The notes below the pieces were generated by a model, which searched no databases, was not told the DNA's origin, and saw only the letters and a list, made by a program, of their open reading frames with translations. Both the position numbers and the translations under genes were made by a program. Shown here in pieces: positions 34,299 through 55,500 of a stretch of DNA of 64,000 nt; the first letter of the stretch is position 1; the number at the start of each line of letters is the position of its first letter. Source of the stretch: Felis catus (lineage: Eukaryota); contig NC_058381.1 in assembly GCF_018350175.1 (NCBI RefSeq), positions 2,046,001-2,110,000 on the forward strand. The letters are read 5' to 3'.

Positions 34299-34452
34299 CT
34301 AGCCGGCCACGCCCAGGTGGGCCTCGCACACCCAGCGGTAGGGTCTTTGGCAGACATCGTCGTTCCAGCCGTCGGGGTAGAAGTGGGCACAGTCCTCGCC
34401 CCCGCCCAGCCCGTGCCCGTGCCAGTCGTCCGGCTGGCCCGGCCTCCAGTTC
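34299..34452 (-). CDS. CLEC10A: CLEC10A CRD exon 3 (last)
   Basis: [46 protein letters not shown]. Confidence 0.95.
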
Positions 34453-36894
34453 CTGCAGAGAGAGGACAATGGCCAGAGGGCCCAGAACCCAGGCTCGGGG
34501 ACAAGGGACTGAGGGTCAGACCCTGGAGGGGCAGGAGCTGAAGGGGGCAGAGGGGCACAGAAAGCCCGGCCGCACTCACTTGAAGTTGGTCTCATAGTCC
34601 GTCCCATCCACCCACTTCCAGGCTCCTTCGGCATCACTGAGGCCCATCCAGGCGTGTAAGGAGCCTATATGTTCCTGCACAAAGTTCTGGGGCGACAGAA
34701 GGGCAAGGGTGACTTCTCTCCAGCCCAGCCAACTCCCTGGACTCGCAGTTCTGAACTTGACGTGTCCATTCAGCCCGTTGGGGGACACTGGGGACGGTCA
34801 CCCCGATGCCCCCCGGCCAATGAAACTTCTGGGAGCGGCTCGGCGGGTGACAGAGCTCAACCAAGCCCCCTCGGGGATTCCGACGGCCCGGCGGAGGTTG
34901 AGAACCGCTGCCCTCAAGGGGACCCCGGCACTGAGGCGCTCACCTCCTCCTCCCTGGAGTTGACGACCACCAGGTGCGCGTTCTCCAGCCGGCAGTGCTT
35001 CTCGGCCTCCGGCCAGGTCTTCCCGGAGCGGGAGAACCAGTAGCAGCTGCCCTCGAACTCCAGCCAGTTGACCGGGCAGCAGGTACTTTGAGAGCCTGAG
35101 GGGCGGGGAGGTTCTGAGATGCCACCCAGGGGTGGGGGTGGGGGGACGAGCAGGAAATGGGGCGCAGCACCCCCACACCCCTCACCGTTGCTCTTGAGAG
35201 CGGCCACCTGGCAGGTCAGGGTCCTCAGGTCCTTGGCCAGCTGCTGGACTCGAGCGAGGGTATCGGAATGATCTGGGACACACACACAGGTGGGCAGCGG
35301 GGGCGGCGCCCGGGGGAGCTCAGCGAGCCCCCGGAAGCCAGGCGTCCCCGCGCGGGCCAGCCTAGGGCCCTCTGCGCCGTGTCCCGCGCGCGCGCCACGC
35401 CCCGGTGACGGGGACAGGGCCCCCACCTGCTTGCAGCTGCCGCTGGTCCTTCTCCAGCTTGCTCTCCAGGGCGAACACCTTGTCGTTCAGGCTGCGGGCT
35501 GCAGGGCAGGGGGGTCAGCACCGAGGCCGCTCCCCCCACCCCCACCCCCACCCCCACCCCCACCCCTCCCCCCGGGGGCCGCGGCTTCTCACCTGCTTGC
35601 AGCTCCCGCTTGTGATTTTCCACCTCGGCCTTCAGAGACGTTGTCGTTTCTTGCAAACTGCCGCCTGGAGGACACGTGGCGGGGGGAGGACTCGGTGCTC
35701 AGGACCCCCTCCCCCACCCCCACCCCCGCTCCCACGGAGCCCCTTCCGTGTGCCAGGCTCACCCTGGGCGTTCAGGGCCTGGAGCTCGGCCACAGTGCTT
35801 GAGGTGAAGTTGCTGAAAGTGCCTCCCAGGGTCACCAGGTCCCTCTGACACTTGGAATCTGATGGGGAGGGGACAAAGCATGTTGGGATTTATCAGGTCC
35901 TCTGTGAGCCGGCAGCCAGGGCAGCCAGCGGGCTCACCGCGCGCATTGTCCCGCCGTCTCCTCACATGACCCAACCCAGAGGGACGGGCGCTATCGTTAT
36001 CAGCTGTCCCGGTCTGGAGGGGTCAGGCCACTGGGCTACTCAGCCAACCGCACCAAGTGACAGAGCCAGCGGCCACCCTACCCGCCACCACCCCACCCCC
36101 ACCCCCGTGAGCTCGCTCCTCCCTGCCCACGCCGCTCCCCTCACTCTGGGATCCGATCACACAGATGCCAACCAGCAGGAGGAGGCTGATGCCCAGGGAG
36201 AGCAGGAAGGGCCGGGGGCCAGAGCAGAGCCGCTGCAGGTGGTGGAGAGGCGGAGGCGGCCCTGCAAGGGGACAGGGCGTCAGGGCGGGACAGGGAGGAG
36301 GAGAGGGCCCAGGGACCAGTCAGGGATGAGGGCTGTCGCGGGTAATGCTGGGAGGCCGAGGCAGGACACGTGGGGCGGGGTGCACCCAGGCCTCTGACCC
36401 CTCAGGGACCAGCCCAAGCCCTCAGTCACCTGGGCTCCTCACGCCTCCGTGGGGACGCACGGACACAAGCACCCGCAGATGGAGGGGGACGGTGATGGGC
36501 AAGAGGCTATCAGAGTTGGGGGAGGGGCAGAAGGACCCAGAGAGAGCTGGAGCCCCGCCAGGCTCACAGGTGGGTTTCCTTCTGAACCCAAATACTCTTC
36601 CCTCGATGCCAACCCTCACGGCCTCCTCCAGAGCAGAGGGATCCGGGCCCCCTGTGGCCCTCTCTGTCCCTGTCTTCACACTGGGGTCCCCAGAAGCTGG
36701 GGCCGGACCCCCTCAGGATGGGGGCCCCCCTGCAGCCCACACACGGTAGGGGTGCAGGTATGACAGCAGAAACCCTCTACCCCTGAAGAGTGTATCGAAG
36801 GAGGGAACATTTCCCCATCCCTCTTACCGTTTCTAGACCCCTGGCTTTGCTTCTCTGTCTCCGAATGCTGGAACTTTTCATACTGCATAGACAT
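34299..36894 (-). CDS. CLEC10A: C-type lectin CLEC10A (MGL/CD301), spliced CDS, 307 aa
   Basis: complement join(36894..36828,36261..36145,35858..35763,35664..35593,35498..35427,35272..35186,35095..34944,34686..34580,34452..34299)=924 nt; YEKF endocytic motif, type II TM, coiled-coil neck, CRD with QPD, Gly loop, CAHF and WND; lies between SLC16A11 and ASGR2. Confidence 0.94.
34580..34686 (-). CDS. CLEC10A: CLEC10A CRD exon 2
   Basis: [31 protein letters not shown]. Confidence 0.95.
34944..35095 (-). CDS. CLEC10A: CLEC10A CRD exon 1
   Basis: [28 protein letters not shown]. Confidence 0.95.
35186..35272 (-). CDS. CLEC10A: CLEC10A neck exon (87 nt)
   Basis: [28 protein letters not shown]. Confidence 0.92.
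35427..35498 (-). CDS. CLEC10A: CLEC10A neck exon (72 nt, b)
   Basis: [23 protein letters not shown]; AG/GT flanks. Confidence 0.85.
35593..35664 (-). CDS. CLEC10A: CLEC10A neck exon (72 nt, a)
   Basis: [23 protein letters not shown]. Confidence 0.9.
35763..35858 (-). CDS. CLEC10A: CLEC10A neck exon (96 nt)
   Basis: [31 protein letters not shown]. Confidence 0.92.
36145..36261 (-). CDS. CLEC10A: CLEC10A TM exon
   Basis: [31 protein letters not shown]. Confidence 0.93.
36828..36894 (-). CDS. CLEC10A: CLEC10A coding exon 1 (cytoplasmic tail)
   Basis: [22 protein letters not shown], donor gtaag. Confidence 0.88.
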
Positions 36895-38449
36895 GCTTGG
36901 ACCAACGCTGAGGCTACCGGGGCTGAAAGGGAAGCAGGGCCGGGGGGCCAGGCTGAGACAAGAGCTGGGGCGAAGCGGGGAGGCTGGGACTCGGTGGGAG
37001 CCCAGGTCAGGCCCAGAGTCCAAGGAAGAGGTGAACTCAGGTTGAGGGCGCGCCGAGGGTCGGAGAGAGGCTTGGGCCTGGTTCTGGGTTTGTGGGCGAG
37101 GTTGGACGTGGGGTCGGGACTGGGGGTCGGGCGGGGTTGCGTTGAGCTGGGGATGGAAGGAGGTAAAGTAGGAGCTAAATGCAGTACTGGCTGGGACCGG
37201 GGCCGACGCTGGGCTGGCACCGAGGGGCACGTCCTGCCGGCTGGGGTCGGGGATGTGGCTGAGCCTACGCCTGGTGCTGAAGCTGGAAACAGAGTCGGGG
37301 TCAACTTTGGGAAGGGGCTGGTGTTAAGATTCCAGTTGATTCTGAGGTCCAAGCTGGGGCTGGGGCTTAAGGGGAAGCTGGGGTTAGTACCGCGGTTAGG
37401 GCCGCGGTGGGGTGGGGGCTGAAACGGGGCTGAGTCTGCCTGAGATTCGGCCCCCCCATACTTCAAGCCCAACCCAGGGAAGGGAATAGAGTGTAAAACC
37501 TCCCCTCGGCCACTGAATCCCCAAGCTGTCCCTTACCATTTCTTGGTCTCCCCTAAGTGCCAGGCTGGTTACCTGCGTCTGGAACTCCTTGCGCAGCAAT
37601 GCCCAGAGTTGGAAAACACGAGATCCTGGAGATTCCGAGTGGGGGTCACCTACGCGACCAGAGTCCTGCCGGTGTCTGTGTGTCAAAGCCCAGGAGGCTC
37701 TAAGCTGGGATCTCCCGTTTCCCCGACTGGAGTGGGGAAGGAATCGGAAGGCTTGCGGGAGGAAGGGGCTGGATACGGGGCAGGTCCGCTCTCCTCCTCC
37801 TCTGGGGTGTATCTACCCCTGTCCCCTCCTCTTAAGCCCCCCTGACTTCCTCATTTTTACCATTCGGGAGAGGGGAGCCAGACCAGAAGGTCCAAAGGCC
37901 AGTGTGTCCGTTCTCCTCGCCCACGCCCCCTTTCGCTTCCTTCATCTAAAGTTCCCAGAACCCGTCTCCATCAGTGCGCAGCTGGGTCCAGAGGAGCGCA
38001 TCTCTGGTCTTGCTCAATCTCACCAAGTCCTGGCACATGAGCTTCCCCTGGGGCGCCCCGCCCCCCCCCCCCCCCCCAGGGAGGGAAGAACACACGGCAG
38101 AGTGGGGTTTCCTGACTGCAAAGGGAGGAAGGAGGCAGGAAAGGGAAATCTTACCGAGCATCGAATCTGTAACAGGGGATTGTGCCAGAGGCGTGCCAAA
38201 CATTAACCGTTCCGATCCCACAAGAATCTTGGGGAGGAGCTTTGGATGGCGGACTGAGGCTCAGAGCCGGGCCGTGGGCTTCCCAAGTTCATGGGTGTGC
38301 TGAGTGCAAGGGGCCAGAATTGCAGACCACCCTGGCCTGGCCATCTTCAAGAAAGGGAACTGGATTGAATCCCATCACCTGTAAATCTCATTGCCACACA
38401 CGGTGTGAATTCACACTCACAGTCTTTTCTTTTTCTTTTCTTTCTCTTT

Positions 38450-38656
38450 ATTTGCTTAATGTTTATTTATTTTTGAGAGAGAGAGTGCGAGCAAGTGGGG
38501 GAGGGGCAGAGAGAGAGGGAGACACAGAATCCGAAGCAGGCTCCGGGCTCCGAGCTGTCAGCACAGAGCCCTACTCTGGGCTTGAACTCACAGACCGTGA
38601 GATCGTGACCTGAGCCGAAGTCAGACACTTAATCGACTGAGCCCCCCAGGCGCCCC
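38450..38656 (-). mobile_element. Can-SINE
   Basis: SINE body on the minus strand. Confidence 0.88.
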
Positions 38657-38679
38657 GAGATAGGGTCAATTTTTATTAA

Positions 38680-39130
38680 GGCCATCAAGAGTAGGGTGTC
38701 AAGAAAGGCCTTACTGGGAAGGTGATATATGAGCAATGGTCTCCAGGAGGTGAGGGAGCAAGTTATGAGGAGTCCCAGGAGGAACAGGGCTCCAAACGGA
38801 AGACACAGCAGGTGCAAAGGGTGGAAGAATGTCTAGGGTGTACAAGGGTTCTCCATTCGCCAGACTTTTTATGGAGACATGAGCTAGAGAGAAGAGGAGT
38901 AGATGAGTCACAGAGGGAGAAGGGAGGCCGCCAATTCATCAGGGCACTTAGGCTATTGTTAAGCGTTTGTTTTTGCTCCAAGTTGGAGGGGCAGACTTTG
39001 GAGGGGTCGGAGCAGAGGAGGGAATGACCCGCCTTGTGTGTGAACTCGCACGTGTGACACCTGTGTTGTGAATCCCACGAAACGAGACAAGGGCGGAAAC
39101 GGCGCGCTGTGCTCGGAGGCGGTGAGAAGG
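38680..39130. mobile_element. L2 remnant
   Basis: Degenerate motifs typical of L2 3' region (gtgcaaagg, ttttgctccaag..gaggggtcggagcagagg) as recalled. Confidence 0.5.
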
Positions 39131-39194
39131 GTTCTGATCCTGGATAGGCTGCGAAGGTAGAGTTAACAGGATTCTGCTGATAAATTTCGTGTGG

Positions 39195-39199
<5 letters not shown>

Positions 39200-39240
<41 letters not shown>
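39200..39240. repeat. (CA)~20 microsatellite
   Basis: Seen directly. Confidence 0.95.
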
Positions 39241-39244
<4 letters not shown>

Positions 39245-39671
39245 TAGTTCTCCTTCCAGGCCCCAAAATAAAGTACACTTAGAGCATTTCCCATAAATTG
39301 CTGAGTCCTGAGGAAAAACCGCTTTCTCCCTGACTTTTGCAAAGCCGACGCCTAAAGATATGTGATGACCTTTTGCAACTGCGTTCATCGTGTGGGAACA
39401 GTGCTGTGTTGTCATCATGAGCAGGTTAGAAGCTTGTTAACACTGATGACGGTGCAGCTTTCCTCCCAATCCCTCCCGAGGTTCTGTTCCGTGAGCCCGT
39501 CCTCCCAAAGGCCGATCCCTTCCTGACTTCTTCGCAAGTTGCCCTCTTTTCTTTCCTAAATGCTTCTGCCTCTGAGGCCTTCGGAGGCTTCTGCCTTCTT
39601 GAGCATCATAGCTTCCGTCTTCCACCGCTTTCTCCCTGCTGCCTCTCCCAGCACCTCAGCTGGCCAGGATT

Positions 39672-39890
39672 TCTTTATTTTTTTTAACGTTTATTTATTT
39701 TTGAGACACAGAGAGACAGAGCATGAACGGGGGAGGGGCAGAGAGACGGGGAGACACAGAATCGGAAACAGGCTCCAGGCTCTGAGCCATCATCAGCCCA
39801 GAGCCCGACGCGGGGCTCGAACTCATGGACCGTGAGATCGTGACCTGAGCTGAGGTCGGATGCTTAACCGACTGAGCCACCCAAGCGCCC
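39672..39890 (-). mobile_element. Felid SINE
   Basis: Full-length on the minus strand. Confidence 0.9.
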
Positions 39891-40377
39891 CATCCAAAGA
39901 CATAAACTTTTTAAAAAAGGAGGAGAGAGAGAGAGAGAGAAAGACTGGAACTTAGAAGAAAAATGGGTCTTGAGGGTTTTTGCACACCACGTCCTTCTGT
40001 TTAACGGCCCGTTAAATGACTCCCCTGGTGATGCCTTTTTGAGCTGCGGATCCTTCAACTGGATTAACGATGCTGAAGTGAACAGGCTCGTAATGCCTGT
40101 TGGTGCTAAGAAGCAAAGACTGCTCTTGGCTAGGTTTCTAGAAGCAAAACGGGCAGAAACGTCGTTATCAGTCCACCTTCTCCCTACCGTGTAGAGGGAT
40201 ATTCATTTTTCCACACCTTCACCCACAAACCTGTCAGTTCTCGCCAATGTGATGTTCAAGAAACAAATACCTTCTCTGTTGTTTCAGTGATGGCTTAACT
40301 GACTCCTGGCTTGGGAGAAACAAAGTTTTGTCTTGGTGAGGTTCAGAAACTGTCAGAAGCTCTTGTATTTACTTAAA

Positions 40378-40590
40378 GTTTTTTTTTTTTAATGTTTATT
40401 TTTGAGAGAGAGACAGAGACAGAGTACGAGCAGGGGGTGGCAGAGAGAGAGGGAGACACAGAATCCGAAGCGGGTTCCAGGCTCTGAGCTGTCAGCACAG
40501 AGCTCGACGCAGGGCTCGAACTCACGGACCGTGAGTTCATGACCTAAGCCGAAGGCGGCCACTTAACCGACTGAGCCACCCAAGCGCCCC
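40378..40590 (-). mobile_element. Felid SINE
   Basis: Full-length on the minus strand. Confidence 0.9.
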
Positions 40591-40739
40591 CACAGTTTTT
40601 TAACCATAAAACCTTATATATACTTAGGCTTTTATTCTTCTATGTGAACGCTAACGTTATTTTATCCTACCCCCTCCCCCCTCCCACACACACAGTGTTG
40701 GCATTCAGGTCAAACCACAATATGTGTTTCTTTAATTGG

Positions 40740-41365
40740 CCTAATGGGCATTTATAGACCGCCCCACTCAACAGTGGCAGAAGACGCATCGTTCAAGTGC
40801 ACGTGGGACTGCCCCCAAGACAGACCGTGTCGCACAACAAACTTTATAACACATGTAAGCAAATTGAAATTTTACATCTGTCCTCGATAATAATGGAATT
40901 AAGCCAGAAAACAATTAGATGGAAAACCAAAAAAGATAATTATAAAAATCTCCCAACCCCGAAAATTATGCAACACATTTCTCAATAATCCATGGGTCAA
41001 AGAGAAAGTCTCAAGAAAAATTAGAAACGATTTTAAGCTGAACTGCAATGAAAATACAACAGATCAGGGGCGCCTGGGTGGCTCAGTGGTTAAGCGTCCG
41101 ACTTCGGCTCAGGTCATGATCTCAAGGTTCGTGGGTTCGAGCCCCGCGTCGGGCTCTGTGCCGACAGCTTGGAGCCTGGAGCCTGTTTCAGATTCTGTGT
41201 CTCCCTCTCTCTCTCTACCCTTCCCCTGCTCATGTTCTGTCTCTCTCTCTCTCTCTCTCTCTCAAAAATAAATAAGCATTAAAAAATTTTTTTAACAAAC
41301 AAAAAAACTAGCAGCAAATGAGATAGAAAGGAGTTTCCTCAACCTGTAAAAGGGCATCTACACCA
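40740..41365 (+). mobile_element. L1 ORF2 fragment interrupted by a Can-SINE (41066-41300)
   Basis: aataatccatgggtcaaaga..aatgaaaatacaaca typical of L1 ORF2. Confidence 0.7.
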
Positions 41366-42260
41366 AGACCTCATTTGGTTGTTATCAGATAGACTCTCCT
41401 GGATTTATCCTTCCTTTACATTCAGCTCTAAGACCAGTCTTAACTCCAGGTCACAAAAGCCCAGCCCAGACCAGAGCGAAGCCTCACGCAGCCCGACTCG
41501 GGAGTCGCAGGCGCGGGGCTCCAGCAGACATTGCCGAGGCTTTGCTCGGATCCCTTCCGGATCCCTTCCCTCCCATTCTTCACGGCCGGCACCTGTGTCT
41601 CTTGGTCAGAAGCCTGCCCTCAAGCTGCCCGAACACAGTTTCGGAACCCACGGCAGGATGTACCTTGGGATTCCCATTCTCGCCAACCCCAGGCAGAACC
41701 CGAACCAATGGCCGTTGGGTGCAAGACTATTAGTGCTCGGGGTTCCTTGTTCCTGACTGGGGAAAGCTGTGCCGGGACAGGACCCGTTGTTGGGACTGTG
41801 CTCAAGATCACCTAGTCACACTTCCTAACGAGTCACTTTCCAAAGAATCTCAGTGTCTGGTACACCCTTGCATAACTTCCTCCCCCTCCCCCTCCTGCAC
41901 CCCCATCCCCCTATCTGTTTTCCTGGGAACACTTTCTCATAAATCACTTTCATAAAGATCCGTATCACAGGACCTGCCACTGGAGAATCTAGGACAGGAG
42001 TCATGGGCTGTTCTGTTCCTCCTTCCCCTTTCTTTCCTCTTCTCCTCACTGAGCATCAAGGGTTGGGCGAAGGAGGGAGGAATTCAAGGAAGAGGCCCGC
42101 GATCTGGTGCCGTTGTGGCTGGTGGCCAGGACGCGCTTCACAGCAGGCCTCCAACACTGGCCTTCCGTGGGCTCTGTTGGTGGTGCCTCTGAGACTCTTA
42201 TGGGACCCTCTGCACCACAGGAGCCCCTCCCGAGGACGACGAATTCTCTGGCTACCCTCT

Positions 42261-42343
42261 GATGGCCACCATCGGCTCTTGCCCCGATGGCCACCATTGG
42301 CTCTTGCCCAATAGCCACCATCAGCTCTTGCCTCAGTGGCCAA
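42261..42343. repeat. About 3 copies of a 24-25-bp unit (atggccaccatcggctcttgccc)
   Basis: Seen directly. Confidence 0.8.
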
Positions 42344-43485
42344 CTACCCTAGATTCCAGCCATACACGCACGGTCTCCTTCAGCCTCACTCTGTGACAAA
42401 GTGCTCTTGGGCAGGGTCCTTCCTGGATGGCTCAGGCCTGGCATCCCTGGGGTCCACCAGGCTCACATTTTCCGTGACATTCTCACCCTGACAGATGACC
42501 AAGTGCGGCAGGACCCACTGATGCACAGGGCAGCTTTAGCCCCGGTTCTCTGCCTTCAGACGTCTCCTGTCAAGGACAAGTCTCTTTCTCCACGAGTGCC
42601 CTCAAAAATCCTGAAGACACATCCACGGCCGCCCCTAAAGTTCTTCTTGCCCCTGTCAAATAGCAGTCCACGGCCGTCCCCACAGCGTCTGCGGCTTACC
42701 TACCATCTGGCCCGGTAGTGACATGCCTGTTGTCCCCCCTTCGCGGACACCCCCGTCTCTACTGTGGCTCCCTTTGGACTCCAGCATCTGGCCAGTGGGT
42801 TGCAGGGAAGCATCCCCTTCCTCCATATGGAGAAAAAAAAAAAAGACTTGAATCTCTTGCCACATCTAAGAATGCCCTTGAAATGAACTCCTCAACTCCC
42901 TCGTCCCCTCTTACAGAGTCAGGGAGGGATGATGGTGGGCTACTTTGGCACCTCTTGGTAAATCCTGCCTGTGTGCGTCCAGCTCCCCTGGGTTTTAAAG
43001 GCACGGCCATTATCCGCAATCGTTCTCGGCTTTGGGAATCCAGCCAAACTTCTATAAAAACAGGAAAAGTGTCGTTTAATCTCTCTCATGTGGCCCTGTC
43101 ACTCTTCTCACTTCCTGAATCGGGCTTTGCCAAGATTTGATTGATCACATGAGAGTTTTTGTAAACAGATTTTTGCTAAGAGGGTAGAAAGACAGACTAC
43201 AGGCTTGGAGAAAATACTCGCAGACCACATACCAAACAGAAGACGAGTGTCTAGAATATGGAAGAATCTTCCAGGCCCCACTCGGGGGAGGGATGACTAA
43301 CGTAGGCTTTAACGTTTCACAACGCCGTGCTCATGTATCGCTTTGCCCTCAGAAGGTGCTCAGACAGACTGGGCTGAAAGAAATTATTCAATCCCCCCCA
43401 AATACTGTCCAAGTTCTTCAAGTAAATTCACTCAAGTATAATTACACACGGATATGTATACTGTATATGCAAAAAAAGAATTCTT

Positions 43486-44345
43486 GGGGCATCTGGGTGG
43501 CTCAGTCGGTTAAGGGTCCAACCCTTTGATTTTGGCTGAGGTCATGATGTCTTTCTTGGTTGTGAGTTCGAGCCCCACATCGGGCTCCATGCTGAGTGTG
43601 GAGCCTGCTTGGGATCCTCTCTCCCTCAAAAAAACTTTTCTTTAATGTTGATTTATTTTGAGAGAGAGAGAAAACGCAAGTGGGGGAAGGGCAGAGAGAG
43701 AGGGGGAGAGAGTGCCAGGCAGGTTCTGCACAGTCAGCATGGAGCCCAACACGGTGCTCGATCCCACCAACCTTCAGATAATGACCTGTACTGAAATCAA
43801 GAGTTGGACAGACTGAGCCATTAAATTGTTCTAATTAAAAAAATTTTTTTAAGTTTATTTATTTTGAAAGAGAGAGAGAGAGAGAGCTTGAGTAGGGGAG
43901 GGTCAGAGAGAGAGAGATGGAGAGAGAAAGAATCCCAAGCAGGCTCCCTGCCATCAGCGCAGAGCCCAACGTGGGGCTCGAACCCACAAATCACGAAATC
44001 GTGACCCAAGCCAAAATCCAGAGTCGGGCACTCAGCTGACTGAGCTACCCAGGCTCCCCCTGCAAAAAAAAAAAAATTTTTTTTAAGCATTCTCAAGATC
44101 CAACGGTAGAGTAAACCAATTAGAAAATGGGCAAAAAACACAGAGACGTTTCTCCAAAGAGGACATACACATAGAAAACAAGCACAGGAGATGTGCGATG
44201 TACCATTGGCCATCAGCGAAATGCAGAGTAAAAGCACAGTGATATACGGGGCGCCGGGGGGGCTCAGTCGGTTCAGCGTCCAACTTCAGCTCGGGTCACG
44301 AGCTCGCAGTTCGTGAGTTCGAGCCCCACGTCGGGCACAGAAATT
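43486..44345. mobile_element. SINE cluster within an old L1 fragment
   Basis: Four SINE pieces; L1 motif aaaatgggcaaaa..tctccaaagaggacatac. Confidence 0.75.
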
Positions 44346-44785: not shown

Positions 44786-47700
44786 GGAGCGCCTGGGTGG
44801 CTCGGTCGGTTGAGCATTTAGTTCTTGGTTTCGGCCTGGGTCATGATCCCAGGGTCATGGGATTGAGCCCCTTGTCAGGCTCTGTGCTAGCATGGAGCTT
44901 GCTTAAGATTTTCTCTCTCTCTCTCTCTCGCCCAGAAAACTCGCCGGACGAGCAGGACAGCAGGACGTCCCAAGGCGACTGCACTGCCCCAGATCCAGTG
45001 ACACCGAGGCCCCCAGCCTGGTGGGTGGGCAGGCGGCCCCGGGAGGCACAGAGCAGACTGACAAGGAACCTCCGGCGCCCTGAGCTCTAGGACCCCACCA
45101 GTCCCCTTACGAGGGCCCCCAGTGGCCCTGGCAATGTCTTCCCAGGATCAGAGACTTTTGTAAGTTGTGCAAACAGAAGTTATTCTCACTACAATCAGTG
45201 AGGGTGACCAGTGTCTCTCTCCCCTGCCACTTCCCCCCCTTCACACTGTCCTCTGTGCCAGGGGGCTGGGGACGCCTGGGTGGTTCAGGCGAAGCATCCG
45301 ACTCTTGATTTCCGGTCAGGTCACGATCCCAAGGTGGTGGGATCGAGCCACACATGAGACTCCACAGTGAGTGTGGAACCTGCCTGGGATTCTCTCTCTC
45401 ACTGCCCCTTCTCTGCCGGCTCTCTCTCTCTTTCTCTCTCTCAAAATAAATAAATAAACATTGGGAAAAAAATAATTAGGCTGGAAATACATTTGACTTG
45501 AGTGGGACGGCCACGGGGACGTGGTTTGCAGTCACATCGTGGATCCGTGTGGCTTTCAGGGGTCCTTCAGCCACGGGCTGTGCAGACGCACCAGGGGGAG
45601 ACACTGAGGTGGGACACGAAATGCGCCCTGAAGCTCTTGATATCGGTGATAAAGAGTAAACCACAACAACCTGTCCCTTCTCCTTGTGGAAAGACACCTT
45701 GCCACGTCTTTGCCACGTGTACGAGTACACAGTGAGTACTCGGGGGAAAAATGTGTAGGGAAAATGAATTTTATTTTTTTAATAGTTTTTATTTTCATTT
45801 TTTTGTAAAAGCTTATTTATTTATTTTGAGAGAGAGAGGGGCTCGATCTCACACATCGTGAGATCATGACCTGAGCCGAAGTCGGACGCTTAACCGACGG
45901 AGCCACCCAGGCGCCCCTAGGAAAATGAATTTTAGAGGTCAGTTGGGAATATTATTACAAATATCATATCCTTTTTCAGGATTTTGTGGTGTTTATGGTA
46001 GCTTTCAGCTTTTTAGAGTTGTGGGGAGGAGGGTTCTACCAAGTAAATATTCATAATGTTCTTTTTTTAAATTTTATTTATTTTGATAGAAACAGAATGA
46101 GAGAGTGTGTGTGAGCAGGGGAGGGGCAGAGAGAGAGGGAGAGAGAATCCCAAGCAGGCTCCACGTTGTCAGCACACAGCCCGATTTGCGGCTCGAGCTC
46201 ACAAACCTTGAGATCACGGCCTGAGCCGATCTCAAGAGTCAGATGCTTAACCGACCGGGCCACCCAGGCGCCCCTCATGATGTTATTTTTTTTAAGGAAG
46301 GCTCCTCAAAACTGAGTATGCTTCAGGCCCCATAAATCTTGGGTTCACCCACGTGGCTCTAGGAAAACGCAGGCACTGGTTATGTGACCTGTCACCGCGT
46401 GCAGAAAATTATATCCGGGCTTTTTCCAGTCCAGGATGATTTCGTAACAGGTTCAAAGAACACGAAGAAAATTTTTAAGTGAGATAATTATTAACTTCAG
46501 AAGAAACAGCAGTTGTGCAAGAAAGGAACTGTAACCAGATCACGAGGCGTGGCTCAGCAGGTACCCGGATGGACGCAGGCGTAACTGATGCAGATCCTGA
46601 ATTGGGATTTAAATGAAAATTGTTCGGACGCCTGGGTGGCTCAGTTGGTGAAGCATCGGACCTTTTTGTGTTTTTTTTTTTAACTTACATCCAAGTTAGC
46701 ATAGAGCGCAATAATGATTTCAGGACTAGATTCCTGTGACTCATCCCCTACGTATAACACCCAGTGCCCGTCCCAACAGGAGCCCTCCTTAATGCCCCTC
46801 CCCCATTTAGCCCACCCCCCCCCCCCGCCCCAGCCCCTCCAGCAACCCTCAGTTTTTTCTCCGTATTTAAGAGTCTCTTATGTTTTGTCCCCCTCCCTGT
46901 TTTTATATTACTTTTGCTTCCCTTCCCTTATGTTCATCCGTCTTGTATCTTAAATTCCACATATCGGTGAAGTCCCATGATATTCGTCTTTCTCTGACTG
47001 GCTGATTTCACTTAGCATAAAGCATCGTAGCCTAAAGCAGAAGATCTCAGCTCAGGTCACGATCTTGTGGTTCGTGAGTCGGAGACCCGCGTCGGGCTCT
47101 GCCCCAATGGCACGGAGCCTGATTGGGATTCTGTCCCTCCTTCTCTCTGTCCCTCCCACCCCCCTCAAAATAAACTTAAAATTAAAAAAAAAAAAATTCT
47201 GATATCAATCCTAGAGGGCACAACTAAAGCCCCGGAAGGGGTTTCTCTGAACAGCCAGTGCTTCAAGCCCTGTAAGGCTTGAAGCCTCATGAATGACCAC
47301 TTTTGTAGTTTAATAATTTAAGGCCAATCATATGTGCTTTGAAGGAGGAGTCCTAGAAAATTTTGAAAGTGAAAATGAGGAAATCTTGGAGCGCCTGGGT
47401 GGCTCAGTCAGTTAAGCCTCTGACTGTGGCTCACGTCATGATCTTGTGGTTTGAGAGTTTGAGCCCCGAGTCGGGCTCTGTGTTGACAGCTCAGAGCCTG
47501 GAGCCTGCTTTGGATTCTGTCTCCCTCTCTCTCTGCCCCTGCCCCATTCAGGTTCTGCCTCTCTCTCAAAAATAAATGAGCATTAAAAAATTGTCTTTAA
47601 AAGAAAATTAGGAAGTGTAGAAAGCATGGGGTTAGAAGCCGCAATTGCTTGAAATATTGCAGGTGAAAATATGGGGCGCCTGGGGGACTCAGTCAGTTGA

Positions 47701-47850
47701 GCATCAGACTTCAGCTCTGGTCATGATCTCACAGTTCATGGGTTCGAGCCCCGCGTCGGGCTCAGTGCTGTCGGCGCAGAGCCCGCTTCAGATCCTCTGC
47801 CCCTCCCCTGCTCACGCTCTCTCTCAAAAATAAAAACATTAAAAAATAAA
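44786..47850. mobile_element. Dense SINE cluster plus antisense carnivore L1 3' end (about 46680-47015)
   Basis: Several SINE heads; L1 tail nested inside a split SINE (46626-46660 and 47045-47195). Confidence 0.75.
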
Positions 47851-48074
47851 TATTATAGGTGAACACCAAAATGGCCACTGGTCCACCACAGAGAATGGCC
47901 AGATCCCCCAGGGCGCATCCATGCTTGGGAACTCTCGATGCCAAATTCCACGAGGCAGAACTTGTCAGGGAGCCGGCGAGACTGGGTGCGGGGCCACAAA
48001 ATCAAAAGAAGCCAGAGCGAAATGCCACGTGGCACCCAGGCACGAATGCAGGAAACCCCCTGACGGGAAACCTG

Positions 48075-48552
48075 GCTCGGGTCATTTTATGCGTCCACTT
48101 GACCGGACCCCAGGGTGCCAGTCAGACACCATTGTGGGCGTGTCTGTGCTCGGGATAGGGTGAACACTGGAATTGGTAGAGCAGGTCGGGCTAAGCCCCC
48201 GGCTAGAATAAACAGTGGGCCCTCCCGGAAGGAAGAGAACCTTCTCCCTGCCTGACCCCCTTCTCCCTGCAACATCAGCTGGCACCGGAAGGGAACATCC
48301 ACTCTTCCCGGGTCGTGAGCTCACCGCCTTCACCTGGAACCGCATCATGGGCTCCCCTGGGTGCCCGGGCTGTGGATTCACACTGGAATTGTCACCACTG
48401 GCTCTCCGGGGGGTCCGGCTCGCCTGCACACCCGCAGGACTCGTCAACCTCCATAATCGCACGAGCCAAATCCTTATAACAAATCTCTTTAATAAGTGAT
48501 GCACACACATACGTCCACATCCGACTGGTTCTTTGGAGAGCCCTGACTAATC
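48075..48552 (+). mobile_element. ERVL LTR remnant (MLT2-like)
   Basis: ttttatgcgtccacttgac start; gagccaaatccttataacaaatctct..tggagagccctgactaat end. Confidence 0.7.
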
Positions 48553-49410
48553 CTCTGGGCACGATAGTTAACTCTGGGAGAAGGCGGGGGAGTGAGGGGC
48601 CTCCCTGGGTGTGTGTGTGTGAGAGAGAGAGAGAGGGAGAGAAACACTTTTTACTAAGACCATATATTATTTTAGTAAAAATAAAACAGCCAATTGTTTA
48701 AAGGCCCTCTTAATATCGCCTTCAGGATGATCTTGGAAGGGTGAAGTTCAGGCACCGTGGAAGCAGCCAGTGACACCCTGTGCTGGGGAAATGTCTAGAT
48801 CTCTTACGGTCCAGAGAGGAGCAGTCACAGTGGACACAGGGCACAGAGGCTTCCCGACCTGCCTCCCCTTAGAGAGTATTTTCCACGGGCCCCCAGGCAG
48901 CTGGGCCACAGCTCCCGGGCTGGCGGGGGGGGGGGGGGGGGGGGGGGGGGAGGGGGGGCTGTTGTTCCCCAAAACCTCTTCTGCAGGAGACCCCCCCCCC
49001 ACTGCCAAGGATTTGGGGGGTGGAGGGTGCTGTTTCCAGGGGCTGCGTCCCGCTGAGCGGCTCGGCTCCAAGCCCCCCTCCCCTCCCTGACCCATGTCCC
49101 TTGGGATGGGGTCCCCAGGAGCAGCTGGCTCGGACTGAACCTGTCTCTTCCGGACCCCCCACCCCTTCTTTGCTCCCCACCTCTTCCCAGCTCCCAACGA
49201 CCAGTCCACACAGTTTCAAGCCATTTCTTCTTCCCCTATTGAGCGGCCTGAGAATGATAATCGTGAGGGTGACTTGCTGAAGGAGGCGGGACCTCAGCAT
49301 CTCCAGGGCGGTGATGCCCCCCCCACCCGCTCCGCCCCTCCCCAGGCCTCTATTTTTCCTTTCCTCAAAATCCTCCGGTGAGCTGGGGGGCGGGGCAGGG
49401 GGCGGGGCTT

Positions 49411-49567
49411 CTAACCCGTGATGTTCTGCCTCATCTCGCACACCCAGCGCTGCACCTGCTGGCAGAAATTGTCATTCCAGCGGCCATTGGAGCGGACTTC
49501 CGCGCAGTCTTCGCCTCCTCCCACCTCGTGGCCCTGCCAGTCGTCTGGCTGAGTGGCGGCCCAGTTC
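49411..49567 (-). CDS. ASGR2: ASGR2 CRD exon 3 (last)
   Basis: [38 protein letters not shown]. Confidence 0.95.
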
Positions 49568-52500
49568 CTAGGAAGGCAGGCTAGAGCTCAGGCTTTGACC
49601 CCTACCTACCCCTGCAGCCCTCACCCCCCCCCCCCCCCCAGCCCCCAGCTCAAGAAAAGCACATCCCGAGGAGGGGGCCAGGAGCGCACGCTGCAGCCTT
49701 GGAGGTTGGGAACCTGGGAGGGGGAGGCCTGGGGACTCTGGTCCCCGAGGGAAGGGTGGGAGTGGCTGGCCCCAGGCCAAACGAAGGAGGACGAGGGGGG
49801 AGCCACTTACTTGTAGCCATGATTATAGTCCGTGCCATCCACCCACTTCCACGAGCCATCGCTGTCCGTGAGCCCTATCCAGGCATCAAAGGGGTTTATG
49901 TGCTGTGAAATGAACTTCTGGAAAACAGGTGGTGTGACAAGTAAGGGAGATGATTCATTTCCAGAAGTACCAACTAAAAAGCTGGGCTATCTGGTTAACA
50001 GGAGTTTCCGGCTTATTGGAAATCTGCACGGACCTCCCCACTCCCACAGTGGGGTCCCAAACCCTTAGACACCTCACTTCCTCGTTCTCCCACCCTCCCG
50101 CCAGCCTCCGTTTCGCAGGATTCTTTTTCAAAAGCTTTGCAATGAGCACGCGCCACCGAACTGACGTCTCTGCGTCGCCCCAGGGAACGTCCACTCGTTC
50201 TAATCAGACTAGTTGTGCCTCCCGTGGGCGGGCCCAGGCCACGTCGGCGTAAGGCTGTACCCTCTGTAGCACGCAGCCAATGAGGAAGCAGGGGAGGGAC
50301 TTCAGCTCGGAGATAAATCGTCTGCTGTCACCGCTCCGAGTGCGCCTGTCCGGCAGACGCCCCCTCTTGTAGGAACGTTGATCAGAGCCTCGCTTCACTG
50401 CGCTCGGAGTCTCCGCGTCCCCGCTTAGGTTGGGGCAGCGGGCTTGTGTCTCACAAGCGGGGAGGAAGTTTCTAGTCCCTGGGACCTCCATTCAGGCCAT
50501 AGCTGTGACTCCTTGAGTCTTCTGCAGCTCGATCTGAAGCACCAGCTCCCAGCACAGCTATTCCTGTCTTTCCTTCTGTAACTGGAGTTATTATTTGGTG
50601 GACGTTGGCTGGGCTAAACGTCGTGCTAAGTGCTTTACGAAGATTCTCTTATCTGATCCTTACAAAGTCTCTAAATTGGGCGTCCTAGGTTCCTAGGACC
50701 TGGTTTAGGCGTTCCTAAACCAGGTTAAGGAACTTGAGGTAGCTGCAGAGCCCAGGAAGTCCAGTGTCCAGGGGTGGGGAGGTGGGGGAGGTGGGGGGGG
50801 TGGGGGGGTGGGATCTCCGCCCCCTGACCTGACGCCCATTTCATTCCCAGCTCACAGCTGCTACTCTGACTCAAGCCCTTTCCTTGTCTCCTACCCGTGA
50901 CCTCTGACTCTTGGAATTCTGATTCTGGCCCCTGCCCCTGCTGCCCCCATGGACCCCAACACCCATTCAGGATCTCAGTTTCAGGAGAACCCAGGTGGCT
51001 CAGTTGGCTAAGTATCCAACTTCGGCTCAGGTCATGATCGCACAGTCTGTGGGTTCGAGCCCCTTGTCAGTCTCTGTGCTGATAGCTCGGAGCCTGGAGC
51101 CTGCTTCCGGTTCTGTGTCTCCCTCTCTCCCTGCTCCTCCCCTGCTCGCGCTTTGTCTCTGTCTCTCTCTCTCAAAAATAAACATTTTTCAAAAACTTTT
51201 TAAAAGCAAAGAAGAGATGAATGATGTAAAATACCAGAGAAAATATCCAAGAAGAAAAATAATACGACGCTACGTGAAGGGAAGAAACCCAAGGAAGATT
51301 TGAGTTCTGCAAGAAAGCCCAGGAGCCCCGCAGAAAGCCGGGCGTCGAGTATAAACTATAGGCTTGGGGACAGGACCGCAAGGCAGAGGGAAAGAGAGAA
51401 AAACAAGAAGCAAAGGGCACAAGGTGGTGGCTGGGGACGGCACATCACAGAGGTATATTTGCATGACCCGTTCCAGAAAAAGAAAGAGCCCATGCAAGGA
51501 AAAAAAAATGTAATGTTCATGTATTTAAACATATGTTTAAAAAGTTAGAAAACCCAACTTGACGAATTAAGAGGACGCTCCTGACCTCGGAGCAAAACTC
51601 CCAAGAAGAAGAATCAACAACAAGATATGCCTGGATGAGGCTGGTGAGATTCAAGATAGCAAGGACTCCAACCACTCGGGGCAAAACACTTCCAGAATCT
51701 CGGGGAGACTAGAAGGAGGAGGCACTAACAACTTCAAAGTTGCCAAGAGACTAGATCTTAATTGCCGTCAACACAAAAAAGAAATGATTTTGTGACACGC
51801 TAAAGGTGTGAGCAAGGAGCAATCATATTGCAATGTGTAAATGTATCAAGCCCACACACTGTAGGCTTCAAACTTACACAATGTTACATGTCAATGATAT
51901 CTCAATTAAAAAGAAAAAAAAAAATGAGGCAGGGGCGCCTGGCTGGCTCAGCCAGTAGAGCATTGAATTCTTGATCTCAGGGTCATGAGTTTGAGCCCCA
52001 CACTGGACATGGAGCTACTTAAAAACGAACCCCCCCAAAAAAAACCAAAAATAAAAAAACAAGGCACATAGATAAGAATAAGTGGGCTGGTTTCCTCACC
52101 TTTCATATGGGAAGTTATATGAACTCGCTGATTTTTTCAATCCAATAAATTTCAGCCCATCATTTACATAATTTTAAATGCAATTTAGCAATTCGAAGTC
52201 ATCATTAGTATAATTAAAAATAAGCCAAGTCTAGGGGCACCCGGGGGGGGTTCAGTCGGTTAAGCATCTGACTTCCGCTAGGTCATGATCTCACAGTCTG
52301 TGAGTTCGAGCCCCGCGTCGGGCTCTGTGCTGACAGCTTGGAGCCCGGAGCCTGCTTCGGATTCTGTGTCTCCCTCTCTCTCTGTCCCTCCCCTGCTCGC
52401 ACTCTGACTCTCTCTCCGTCAAAAAAATAAATAAACATTAAAAGAAAGTTTAACAGAGTTTTGGGGTGTGAGACCAAGGTCACTATTTTTTAAACTCCTC

Positions 52501-55500
52501 CCGTGTAAAGGCTGGCATTATACATCCGAGGCTGAGAATCACCAATTTAAAACAGAGACTCCAAAAGCATGGACAGAGGCAGGTGAAGCAAATGCAAGGA
52601 AGAAGAAAGGAAGGACCATCTACTTTTATCCACATGCAAGGCCTGAAAGCAGACCCTGAGGGTCACGCCGTCACAAGGGCAGTCAGCCAGGGCCACCGCA
52701 AAGCTGGGGCCATCACGAACTTACTGTGGGTCAGAGCACAGAGCAGAGAGATCTCAGGTTGACCCACGTGAAACGGGCATTTTTTTTTCAAGTCAAAAGT
52801 GCTTGCACATGAGCAGTTTCAACCTGATCGGCAAAGCGAAATATGTTTGTAATTATTCTACCGTATAAATACATATATACACTGATAAATTTGATATATT
52901 AATATATATAAATTTGATACATTGGCATATTGATATAATATGTTGATATCTTTATATATGGGTTTTTTTATTTTTTTTTTACATTTATTTATTTTTGAGA
53001 GCCAGAGAGAGACAGAGCACAAGTGGGGGAGGGGCAGAGAGAGAGGGAGACACAGAATCCGAAGCAGGCTCCAGGCTCTGAGCCAGCAGCACAGAGCCCG
53101 ACGCGGGGCTCGAACCCACGAACTGTGAGATCGTGACCTGAGCCGAAGTCGGACGCTCAACCGACTGAGCCACCCAGGCGCCCCATATATATGTTGATAT
53201 ATAAACATACATAGTTGACATATTGATCAATGTCTATATGTTTGATATATTGATATCTTTATATATGTTGATATATAAATATATATGATATATTGATCAA
53301 TGTCTATACATTTGATATATTGGCATATTGGTATCTTTATATATGTTCGTATATAAATATATATATTTGCTATGTTGACCAATGTCTATATGTTTGATAT
53401 ATTGGCATATTGATATCTTTATATATGTTCATATATAAGTATATATATTTGATATATTGATAAGTATATATTCAATATACATATTCAGTAAATATATTCT
53501 GGCAATATGTCGAGTTGAAAACACTGGCTAAGGAGGTGAGCGAATCTGAATTCTGGCTCTGTCCTGCATTACGGGCAAGTCACTTGACCCCCCCCCTTTT
53601 TCTTAGTCCCCTCATCTCTGCCTCCCTCAAAGGGGGGTCCGAGCGCCCGCCCCATAGGGTCGTGAGGATTACAGGTTAACGCATGAAAACTCCTCGCACG
53701 CAGCAAAGACTCAATGACCGATCCCCGTCGTATCCTCCTTTTCAGAAAATCGCCCCCCCCCCCCCAATGGCTTGGTCCTCCCCTGGGAACACGTGTTCGC
53801 GGCTGTGGCTGGTGGCAGCGGTGGGCAGGGGAGACCTGAAGCGCTTTGGAGGGACCCAGGAACCCTGCCCACTCTGTCCCTTTCAGCCCATGACCGACCC
53901 CACCCCAAGTACAGCAAGAAGGGCCCCGGCGTCCACACTGTGCCGTCGGAGCACCTGTGCCCGAGCTCCTGGCGCTAACGTCCCACCTCTTAGAATCTGT
54001 GGCCGCTTCGCCATGAACTTCCCGGCGCTCGGCCACACCTCTGCTTCTGGACGCTTCCTTTGGTTAGAAAATAATACTAAAGCAGCCTGCCCAGCCCCCC
54101 GGGCATACCCTGGGCCGCGCTCACCTGCTCCTCCCTGGAGTTGACGACCACCAGGTGCGCGTTCTCCAGCCGGCAGTGCTTCTCGGCCTCCGGCCAGGTC
54201 TTCCCGGAGCGGGAGAACCAGTAGCAGCTGCCCTCGAACTCCAGCCAGTTGACCGGGCAGCATTCCGTGCCTGAGGGGCCGGGGGGCGCGGGGAGATGAG
54301 CCCCGGCAGGAGGGCACAGGCGCCCTGGGACCGGGGACCCCGTGCCCGGGCCCTACCGTTGCTCCGGAAGAAGGCCATCTGACAAGTCAGGATGCGCAGG
54401 TCCACGGGGAAGTGCTTCAGATGAAGGAGCAGGGTGGCGTGATCTAGGGCACCGGGCGACGGACACGGTGGGCATCGCGTGGCGGGCAGTGCCGGCGCCA
54501 GCCCGCCGGGACCCCACGCGGGAGTTCGCGCGCTCACGCATTCACGCTGCGCGCGCACCCACACGACGCACGCGCGCACGCGCGCACACCCCCCGGGGAG
54601 GGTCTCTGACCTGCTTCCAGGTCTTTCTGCTGTTTCTCCAGCTTGGCCTCCAGAGAGGTCAGCAGGTCACTGGCATTGCCCCCTGAAAAGGAAGAAAGCT
54701 CAAGCATTTTCCCTCCCCTCTGCCTCCACCCTGCGTCCCGGCCCCTGGCCTCCCCGCCTCCACCCCGTCCCCACAGCGGCTTCCTAAGCCTAAGCAGGGT
54801 CCCCACGTTCCCAAAACAGACCCGCCACTTCATTAGCAGGGCCTGCCGGCATGACCCCTCACCACTTAGCCCCCGCCTCCCAGGGTCTTCCTCACCTGCT
54901 GGCCTCGCAGCTTCTGTTCCCTCCACCCGGCACTAACCCCCACCCTCTGCACCTGCCTGATCATCCTTCCGGGTCCCTCCGCCCAGGGATCCCGTCCCTG
55001 GAAGCCTGGGGGCCCCCTACCCCCAGCACCCCAAACACGCCCCCCTCCTGCTTCCCCCGGGGAGGCGCCCCCTCACCATGCGAGCTGAGAGCGCCCATCT
55101 CCGTGAAGACGCCGGAGGAGAAGTGGCTGAAGTTCTCTTTCAGGATCCGCAGCTCCTCTTGAAGCTGGGCTCCTTGTCGGGGGAGAGGGACAGAAGGGAC
55201 AGGGCAAAGTGGAGCGGGCTGTGTCCCGAAGGACAGCCCCTCCCCGCCCCGGCCCCGCCCGGCCCCTGCGACCCTCACTCTGGGACCCGATGACGCAGAC
55301 GGCCACCAGCAGCAGGACGTTGAGGCCCAGGATGAGCAGACTGAGGCGGAGCCTGGAGCATAGACGCTGCAGCAGCCACGGCGGGCGAGGAGGGGGCCCT
55401 GGCGGAGAAGGGGCGTCAGAGGGAAGCGCCTGGGGCGCGGGAGGCCCACAGAGCGCACCGTGGGAGCACCGGGGGAGCGTAGCCACCGCCGGGAGGAGAG

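What the first reader, a model, noticed from the sequence alone, without database searches (positions are those of the whole stretch)
34936..54262. Exon-restricted gene conversion: CLEC10A and ASGR2 share a 100% identical 135-bp CRD tract
Seen: 34947-35081 (CLEC10A CRD exon 1) equals 54128-54262 (ASGR2 CRD exon 1) base for base, offset 19,181 bp. That is 45 codons with no synonymous difference ([45 protein letters not shown]), and 145/146 when the donor flank gcgctcacct is included. Identity stops at the exon edges, and the other exons and introns are clearly divergent. Known: these paralogs (myeloid GalNAc/Tn receptor and hepatocyte receptor subunit) predate the placental radiation, so protein constraint cannot explain silent-site identity. 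Inference: recent non-allelic gene conversion homogenised the N-terminal scaffold of the CRD while the sugar-binding exon (QPD/WND) stayed gene-specific, i.e. modular concerted evolution in the ASGR/MGL cluster. Third codon positions in the tract are essentially all G/C, consistent with GC-biased conversion.
Basis: partly seen in the sequence, partly recalled or inferred. Interest (0 to 1): 0.85.

Follow-up and report, generated by a model that had tools for sequence, protein, structure and literature searches.

The report
One lectin exon copied between neighbours
Two neighbouring sugar-receptor genes of a cat (CLEC10A and ASGR2) carry a 135-letter stretch of one exon that is letter-for-letter identical because one gene has overwritten the other, and protein comparisons suggest the same exon has been overwritten repeatedly in several mammal lineages; it is a clear but ordinary kind of event.

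Summary
Window 34947-35081 equals 54128-54262 exactly (135 nt), and 145/146 over 34936-35081. The other six exon pairs are 64% identical (Ks 0.82), and their longest identical run is 17 nt. The identity is not an assembly artefact. In Logan contigs of three whole-genome samples, the tract is a separate 135-nt contig at about double depth. It joins both a CLEC10A-type and an ASGR2-type flank, and no variant letters appear. The tract does not follow the exon edges. It starts 14 nt (CLEC10A) or 8 nt (ASGR2) inside the exon, leaves the last codon different (GAG/CAG), and runs 8 nt into the intron. Protein comparison of 44 mammal species shows this exon groups by lineage and the sugar-binding exons group by gene. 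In exon 1, 34 sites group by species and 16 by gene. In exons 2+3, the counts are 6 and 177. An AU test rejects CLEC10A monophyly for exon 1 (p=0.008). Variants shared by both paralogs within felids point to several exchanges. The best explanation is interlocus gene conversion, recurrent at this exon. I found no published report. This is a new member of a known kind, of moderate interest.

The parts
34936..35081 (-). Converted tract, CLEC10A copy (146 nt; 135 nt exact at 34947-35081; mismatch at 34946)
54117..54262 (-). Converted tract, ASGR2 copy (146 nt; 135 nt exact at 54128-54262; mismatch at 54127)
   Evidence: the 994-nt contig matching only 34936-34976 with one other letter is this copy's flank
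34944..35095 (-). CLEC10A CRD exon 1 (152 nt; ..[11 protein letters not shown]...NSREEE | gtgagcgc)
   Evidence: phmmer to PDB CLEC10A/ASGR1/ASGR2 CRDs, E about 1e-21
54125..54270 (-). ASGR2 CRD exon 1 (146 nt; ..G TE CCPVNW...NSREEQ | gtgagcgc)
34580..34686 (-). CLEC10A CRD exon 2 ([16 protein letters not shown]...); 66.7% nt identity to the ASGR2 exon
34299..34452 (-). CLEC10A CRD exon 3 with QPD and WND motifs and the stop codon; 65% nt identity to the ASGR2 exon
35186..35273 (-). CLEC10A last neck exon, just upstream of CRD exon 1; 62% nt identity to the ASGR2 exon
36143..36262 (-). CLEC10A transmembrane exon (approximate edges); 72% nt identity to the ASGR2 exon
49811..49917 (-). ASGR2 CRD exon 2 ([16 protein letters not shown]...)
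49411..49567 (-). ASGR2 CRD exon 3 with QPD and WND motifs and the stop codon
54357..54444 (-). ASGR2 last neck exon
55280..55411 (-). ASGR2 transmembrane exon (approximate edges)

Best explanation
The tract is the product of interlocus (non-allelic) gene conversion between two tandem, same-strand paralogs 19 kb apart. CLEC10A is the macrophage Gal/GalNAc lectin gene and ASGR2 encodes the minor subunit of the hepatic asialoglycoprotein receptor. During repair of a break in one gene, the matching exon of the other served as template. The heteroduplex could extend only across the small island that still aligns, which is most of CRD exon 1 plus 8 nt of the splice donor. About 146 nt were therefore overwritten, and the introns and the sugar-binding exons were left untouched. 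Shown here: the identity is real, it includes all silent sites, and it is present in raw data of independent animals. Inferred from protein comparisons: this exon has been exchanged repeatedly and in both directions in several mammal lineages and within Felidae. In the lineage of this window the last copy probably went from CLEC10A into ASGR2. Each exchange resets identity and so eases the next one. The exon encodes the N-terminal scaffold of the CRD, which is interchangeable, so selection tolerates the exchange.
For: Within the window, the tract is 135/135 (145/146) identical against 64% in the other exons, with Ks 0 against 0.82 and a permutation p below 5e-5.

Three WGS samples from three studies were laid on the window. 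The tract is a stand-alone 135-nt contig at depth 63 in X1 and 76 in X2. In X12 it forms two abutting contigs at depth 72. Flanking contigs are at 20-37. Two alternative low-side flanks are present: a 586-nt CLEC10A contig and a 994-nt contig that matches only 34936-34976 with one other letter. No variant letters were seen.

Across 44 species, paralog identity in exon 1 ranges from 57% to 100%, while exons 2+3 stay at 38-61%. In 15 disjoint species pairs, exon 1 has 34 species-grouping and 16 gene-grouping sites, against 6 and 177 in exons 2+3. The gene label changes 20 times on the exon-1 tree and 3 times on the exon-2+3 tree. The AU test rejects one CLEC10A clade for exon 1 (p=0.0076). Feliform CLEC10A plus ASGR2 form one clade (support 88), as do the arctoid pairs (support 92).

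Within felids, both Lynx paralogs have Tyr30, and both P. uncia paralogs have Glu21 while other Panthera have it only in CLEC10A. Both hyaenid paralogs have Ile40-Thr41. ASGR2 has Tyr30 (with Ala4 or Thr4 in Lynx and Prionailurus) in Lynx, Prionailurus and Leopardus, but the CLEC10A states in Felis.

The tract length fits published non-allelic conversion tracts, with a mean of 250 bp (CI 63-1000) and GC bias (bioRxiv 10.1101/135152).
Against: No nucleotide sequence of any other species could be obtained. Recurrence, direction and timing therefore rest on 46 amino-acid columns and on predicted proteins.

Incomplete lineage sorting or hybridisation among cats could mimic some 'independent' events.

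Two of the three read sets are flagged as possible sources of the assembly.

In sample X12 the tract contig is split at 34966/34995 and there is a loose end at 35024. This is unexplained.

GC3 is also high (61-92%) in unconverted exons, so GC bias is not demonstrated.
Confidence: 0.9

Rival explanations
1. Assembly or polishing artefact: one copy's sequence was pasted onto the other in the reference, and the true exons differ.
For: An exact 135-nt repeat is the kind of place where short-read polishing can copy one paralog onto another. Runs X1 and X2 may be the assembly's own source.
Against:: in three samples the k-mer graph has a single tract contig at about twice the flank depth. It joins both a CLEC10A flank and an ASGR2-type flank, and no alternative letters appear. 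X12 is not flagged as a source. Eleven other felid genome annotations give 93-100% identical paralog exons that keep their gene-specific first residues, SQST versus TE.
Confidence: 0.02
2. A single old conversion in the feliform or carnivoran ancestor, followed by very slow divergence, with no recurrent exchange.
For: The exon is conserved in general, at 57-70% protein identity between paralogs even where no exchange is evident. Zero differences at about 36 near-neutral sites only bounds the last event to under roughly 20-40 My (my calculation, assuming 1-2.2e-9 per site per year).
Against: Lineage-specific residues are shared by both paralogs at nested levels: hyaenids, Lynx and P. uncia, arctoids and hedgehog. 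ASGR2 states are patchy across the cat tree. Both patterns need several events.
Confidence: 0.05
3. Extreme purifying selection at the nucleotide level (a splicing, regulatory or dual-coding element in the exon) keeps both copies identical without any copying.
For: All 45 codons have G/C at the third position, and the splice donor is also identical.
Against: Such constraint would hold orthologs constant. Instead the exon differs between cat, hyaena, seal, bear, dog and others at 2-9 residues, while the two paralogs change together. The exon's first 8-14 nt are free to diverge.
Confidence: 0.02
4. Unequal crossing-over or a small segmental duplication replaced the exon, rather than conversion.
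For: The genes are tandem and in the same orientation. Read-through ASGR2-CLEC10A gene models exist.
Against: A crossover would make everything on one side chimeric. Here both flanks of a 146-nt patch remain gene-specific, and gene order and number are unchanged.
Confidence: 0.02

Closest known systems
Paired Siglec receptors homogenised by gene conversion (SIGLEC11/SIGLEC16, SIGLEC5/SIGLEC14 in primates; PMC5701461, PMC4042635)
   Same: These are also neighbouring lectin-receptor paralogs. Only the exons for part of the extracellular region are kept near-identical by repeated conversion in several lineages, and the rest of each gene stays distinct.
   Different: In the Siglecs the ligand-binding domain is homogenised, which is read as selection for matched ligand recognition by activating and inhibitory partners. 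Here the sugar-binding exon escapes and only the N-terminal scaffold exon is exchanged. The fold (C-type lectin) and tissue roles (liver versus myeloid cells) also differ.
Non-allelic gene conversion between mammalian duplicates in general (bioRxiv 10.1101/135152; PMC2720389; PMC4467073)
   Same: The tract is short (146 nt against a mean of about 250 bp). The genes are tandem paralogs tens of kb apart. The tract is GC-rich. Concerted evolution of part of a gene pair has lasted through mammalian history.
   Different: ASGR2/CLEC10A appears in neither of the two papers checked. The overall divergence of the pair (Ks about 0.8) is far above the level at which conversion is usually thought to cease, so exchange survives only in one conserved island.
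ICAM1/ICAM3 exon-restricted conversion noted by this scan in the same genome (s1-162424)
   Same: It shows the same pattern in the same genome: one exon near-identical between old paralogs, with repeated copying reported in many placentals.
   Different: It is a different gene family and chromosome piece. That note is an unchecked AI report, and I did not test it.

Membership tests
Interlocus (non-allelic) gene conversion tract | A stretch between paralogs far more alike than the rest of the genes, silent sites included | tested here: met
   135/135 identical with Ks 0, against 64% and Ks 0.82 elsewhere. Permutation: 0 of 20,000.
Interlocus (non-allelic) gene conversion tract | Phylogenetic incongruence: the tract groups by species, the flanking parts by gene | tested here: met
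   Tested at protein level only. Site patterns are 34/16 against 6/177, label changes are 20 against 3, and the AU test gives p=0.0076.
Interlocus (non-allelic) gene conversion tract | Both flanks of the tract remain locus-specific (a patch, not a crossover) | tested here: met
   The exon's 5' 8-14 nt, the introns and all neighbouring exons are diverged.
Interlocus (non-allelic) gene conversion tract | Real in the organism, not an assembly product | tested here: met
   A double-depth 135-nt contig with two sets of flanks in three WGS samples.
Interlocus (non-allelic) gene conversion tract | Donor and acceptor identified with an outgroup | tested here: inconclusive
   Felis ASGR2 has Val4/His30 like CLEC10A. 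Prionailurus and Lynx ASGR2 have Thr4 or Ala4 with Tyr30, and Leopardus ASGR2 has Tyr30. This points to CLEC10A into ASGR2, but from 2 residues and without DNA.
Interlocus (non-allelic) gene conversion tract | GC-biased repair signature (weak-to-strong changes in the acceptor) | tested here: inconclusive
   GC3 is 45/45 in the tract against 61-92% in the other exons. No polarised substitutions are available.
ASGR/MGL group of type II C-type lectins (ASGR1, ASGR2, CLEC10A) | C-type lectin CRD with the Gal/GalNAc-type QPD motif and the WND motif, after a coiled-coil neck and a signal-anchor | tested here: met
   QPDDW and WNDD/WNDN are read in CRD exon 3 of both genes, and the TM and neck exons are present. 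Best PDB matches are the CLEC10A, ASGR1 and ASGR2 CRDs. Homologues carry PF00059 and PF03954.
ASGR/MGL group of type II C-type lectins (ASGR1, ASGR2, CLEC10A) | Orthology of the two window genes to CLEC10A and ASGR2 | tested here: met
   Exons 2+3 group cleanly by gene across 44 species. tblastn of felid CLEC10A and ASGR2 proteins matches the respective loci at 92-100% per exon.

The most novel reading that the evidence does not exclude
CRD exon 1 is a long-lived conversion hot spot of the 17p13-type lectin cluster. It has been exchanged repeatedly, in both directions, among CLEC10A, ASGR2 and in some lineages ASGR1 (in canids all three are 43-44/46 identical). This has happened in at least four placental lineages over tens of millions of years. 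The specificity-determining exons are kept out of the exchange, either by loss of homology or by selection against mixing sugar specificities. Published CRD-based trees and orthology calls for this family would then be mosaics.
Probability: 0.55. Interest if true: 0.55.

Novelty: new member of a known kind. Interest (0 to 1): 0.4.

Why it matters
The finding is a clean, well-bounded example of concerted evolution confined to one module of an old gene pair with Ks of about 0.8. Conversion is usually assumed to have stopped at that divergence. There are practical consequences. The first third of the CRD carries no orthology signal in carnivores and several other orders. The identical exon probably explains chimeric ASGR2-CLEC10A gene models in felid annotations, and short reads cannot be assigned to either gene there. 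The receptors matter medically: ASGR for GalNAc-targeted drugs, and CLEC10A for Tn-antigen recognition. It is therefore useful to know which parts of their CRDs are shared by descent and which by copying when cross-species models are compared. It does not reveal a new mechanism.

Tried and rejected
I could not fetch DNA of other felids, hyaena or dog, so there are no nucleotide trees, no dS between paralogs in other species, and no GENECONV run across species.
- **RNA run X24** (oligo-dT, raw reads) laid no read on the stretch. This gives no test of expression or of read-through transcripts.
- **The search of earlier findings** by place gave nothing near the window.
- **Literature:** no paper in the held library links gene conversion or concerted evolution with ASGR1, ASGR2, CLEC10A or MGL. 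Neither the Carson & Scherer 2009 paper nor the Harpak et al. preprint mentions them. The CLEC10A review does not discuss it.
- **Spliced models:** I searched no joined protein model of the window genes, and the joined step was left out. Exons were searched by reference, and one stop-free genomic stretch (34917-35486) was used with the exon as the scored region.
- **Metagenome scans:** I did not scan metagenome contigs for the exon, because host contamination there would mostly be human.
- **Human sequence:** no human contig was fetched. Human protein chains of the PDB appeared and were only read. The human CLEC10A hit was not used.
- **Excluded rows:** Myotis lucifugus 'CLEC10A-like' P0181, Camelus and Tamandua were left out of the quartet site counts and the trees, because the models are mosaic or truncated.
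- **Assembly artefact, nucleotide-level constraint and crossover** were considered and rejected (see the rival explanations).
Full report
**Observation.**
Reading both places and comparing them at a fixed offset shows that 34947-35081 and 54128-54262 are identical over 135 nt. One mismatch follows (34946 c against 54127 g), then ten more identical bases down to 34936. Beyond these limits the fixed-offset match falls to chance level. The window holds no N. A self-comparison finds no third copy of the tract in the window.

**What the two places are.**
Both lie on the minus strand. Six-frame reading and tblastn with felid proteins found later give two complete type II C-type lectin genes.
- One is a CLEC10A-type gene. 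Its start exon lies near 36.9 kb, followed by a TM exon, four neck exons, and CRD exons at 35095-34944, 34686-34580 and 34452-34299.
- The other is an ASGR2-type gene. Its start exon lies near 59.2 kb, and its CRD exons are at 54270-54125, 49917-49811 and 49567-49411.
- The shared exon's best PDB matches are the CRDs of CLEC10A, ASGR1 and ASGR2, at E about 1e-21.
- The QPD and WND sugar- and calcium-binding motifs sit in CRD exon 3 of both genes.
- The best-matching proteins are those of Felis catus.

**Anatomy of the tract.**
The tract does not coincide with the exon.
- At the exon's 5' end, CLEC10A has 14 nt (..SQST) and ASGR2 has 8 nt (..TE) before the shared TGCTGC. These differ and include a 6-nt indel.
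- At the 3' end, the single mismatch is the first base of the last codon (GAG Glu against CAG Gln).
- The last two exon bases and the first 8 intron bases (gtgagcgc) are again identical.
- The introns beyond are unrelated, and the next intron is about 260 bp against 4.2 kb.
- The tract is therefore a 146-nt island whose limits are the limits of remaining homology.

**More than chance or constraint.**
- The other six exon pairs (630 nt) are 64.3% identical, with pS 0.50, Ks 0.82 and Ka 0.41. The tract has Ks 0 over 28 synonymous sites, and P(no synonymous difference) is 3e-9.
- The longest identical run elsewhere in the coding alignment is 17 nt.
- Shuffling the 229 differences 20,000 times never gave a run above 42, against 137 observed.
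- All 45 third positions are G/C, against 61-92% in the other exons.

**Not an assembly artefact.**
Fourteen whole-genome data sets of the same species hold the CLEC10A stretch. I laid Logan contigs of three of them, from three studies, on 34250-35750.
- In X1 and X2 the tract is a contig of exactly 135 nt (34947-35081), at depth 63 and 76.
- The neighbouring contigs are at 20-37.
- On the low side, two alternative contigs abut the tract. One is a 586-nt contig that continues into the CLEC10A intron. The other is a 994-nt contig that matches only 34936-34976 with one other letter, which is the ASGR2 flank with its G/C difference.
- This is the graph shape expected of one sequence present twice in the reads.
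- No other letters, gaps or joints were reported.
- X12, which is not flagged as a possible source of the assembly, shows the same picture, except that the tract is split at 34966/34995 and one contig runs off after 35024. I cannot explain this.
- The RNA run laid no reads.

**Comparison across species.**
Three searches and one cluster look-up gave CLEC10A and ASGR2 proteins for 44 species, and ASGR1 for eight of them.
- Within a species, the two paralogs are 38-61% identical in CRD exons 2+3 everywhere (the mosaic Myotis lucifugus model aside). In exon 1, identity ranges widely. It is 57-67% in elephant shrew, rodents, xenarthrans and shrews, and 93-100% in all felids. It is 96% in hyaena, 93% in grey seal, 93% in a lemur and 91% in hedgehog.
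- The alignment shows residues peculiar to a lineage yet shared by both paralogs. Examples are Ile40-Thr41 in hyaenids, Pro4, Glu-Asp24-25 and Ser34 in seal, Asp-Ser34-35 in hedgehog, and Gly34 in hippo.
- In 15 disjoint species pairs, exon 1 has 34 sites grouping by species, 16 by gene and 4 crosswise. Exons 2+3 have 6, 177 and 5.
- Cat against every other lineage has no gene-grouping site in exon 1.
- On maximum-likelihood trees, the gene label changes 20 times for exon 1 and 3 times for exons 2+3.
- The AU test rejects a single CLEC10A clade for exon 1 (p=0.0076).
- Feliform CLEC10A plus ASGR2 form one clade (SH-aLRT 88). So do the three arctoid pairs (92), the hedgehog pair (85) and the hyaena pair (87).
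- The gene-grouping sites seen in rodents, afrotherians, xenarthrans and some bats show that the two exons were already distinct early in placental history. The homogeneity elsewhere is therefore secondary.
- The exon assignments in the felid models are sound, because the gene-specific residues SQST and TE are encoded by the same exon as the tract.

**Within Felidae.**
- CLEC10A and ASGR2 differ by 0-3 residues in this exon in every species, but the variants are patchy.
- Both Lynx paralogs have Tyr30.
- Glu21 is in all four Panthera CLEC10A but only in P. uncia ASGR2.
- ASGR2 has Tyr30 in Leopardus, Lynx and Prionailurus, with Ala4 or Thr4 in the last two. It has the CLEC10A states Val4/His30 in Felis, the puma lineage and the pantherines.
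- The last codon is Glu in most CLEC10A, but the ASGR2-type Gln in Lynx, Puma, Herpailurus and Neofelis.
- On the accepted cat phylogeny (my knowledge), this needs several exchanges in both directions. Alternatively it needs sorting of converted and unconverted alleles.
- For the window's lineage, it suggests that ASGR2 was overwritten from CLEC10A after the split from Prionailurus. This is inference from two residues.
- The window alone only bounds the last exchange to under about 20-40 My. That figure assumes zero differences at about 36 near-neutral sites and a rate of 1-2.2e-9 per site per year.

**Mechanism.**
The simplest account is interlocus gene conversion during break repair between tandem paralogs. 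The tract length of 146 nt lies inside the published range, with a mean of 250 bp, and the GC-rich tract fits the reported GC bias. The exon encodes the N-terminal third of the CRD. That third includes the first cysteines and the first helix but none of the QPD/WND loop. Swapping it should therefore not alter sugar specificity, which would explain why exchange is tolerated here. Whether the sugar-binding exons escape through lost homology or through selection is open.

**Known or new.**
Conversion between neighbouring lectin-receptor genes is well known, for example in the Siglec pairs (PMC5701461, PMC4042635). I found no report for ASGR2/CLEC10A in the held library. This scan has noted a like pattern for ICAM1/ICAM3 in the same genome (not tested by me). 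I file the finding as a new member of a known kind.

**Limits.**
- No DNA of other species was available.
- Many of the proteins used are predicted models.
- The exon-1 tree has only 46 columns.
- The joined spliced proteins of the window genes were not searched.
- No human contig was fetched or used.

Noticed in passing
window 34365-34373 (CLEC10A CRD exon 3): Felid CLEC10A lacks the residue just before the WND motif (..PDG-WNDD). All 10 felid species examined lack it. Hyaena has Gly there, and other mammals have Arg, Lys, Gln, Met, Asn or Glu. It is a Felidae-wide one-codon deletion beside the calcium- and sugar-binding site.
   Followed up: partly
window 34390-34420 and 34352-34453: In the WGS contigs, a 31-nt piece of CLEC10A CRD exon 3 (encoding [11 protein letters not shown]) is a separate contig at about double depth. 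It occurs only once in the window. A copy must therefore lie outside, probably in ASGR1, which may mark a second small exchange tract.
   Followed up: partly
window 34966-35024, run X12: In one of three animals the 135-nt tract contig is split at 34966/34995, and one contig leaves the tract after 35024. This could be a variant in one copy or a third partly matching copy.
   Followed up: no
proteins P0006 (Panthera onca), P0013 (Lynx), P0111 (Herpailurus): These predicted isoforms join ASGR2's 5' exons, through CRD exon 1, to CLEC10A's CRD exons 2-3. They may be real read-through transcripts or models misled by the identical exon.
   Followed up: no
proteins P0136, P0113, P0130 (Lycaon) and P0017/P0018 (dog, fox): In canids all three genes, ASGR1 included, are 41-44/46 identical in this exon (41/46 for CLEC10A-ASGR2). 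They share Ser34 and the ending NSREEQ, which most other ASGR1 lack. In felids ASGR1 stays apart, with 4-8 differences.
   Followed up: partly
protein P0181 (Myotis lucifugus 'CLEC10A-like'): Its CRD exons 2+3 are 94% identical to the species' ASGR2. It is either a mosaic gene or a mixed gene model. Vespertilionid bats list many extra family members.
   Followed up: no
window 17522-17865 and 53186-53460: Tandem repeats (period about 28 and about 75 nt) and many copies of a roughly 200-nt carnivore SINE dominate the self-matches of the window.
   Followed up: no
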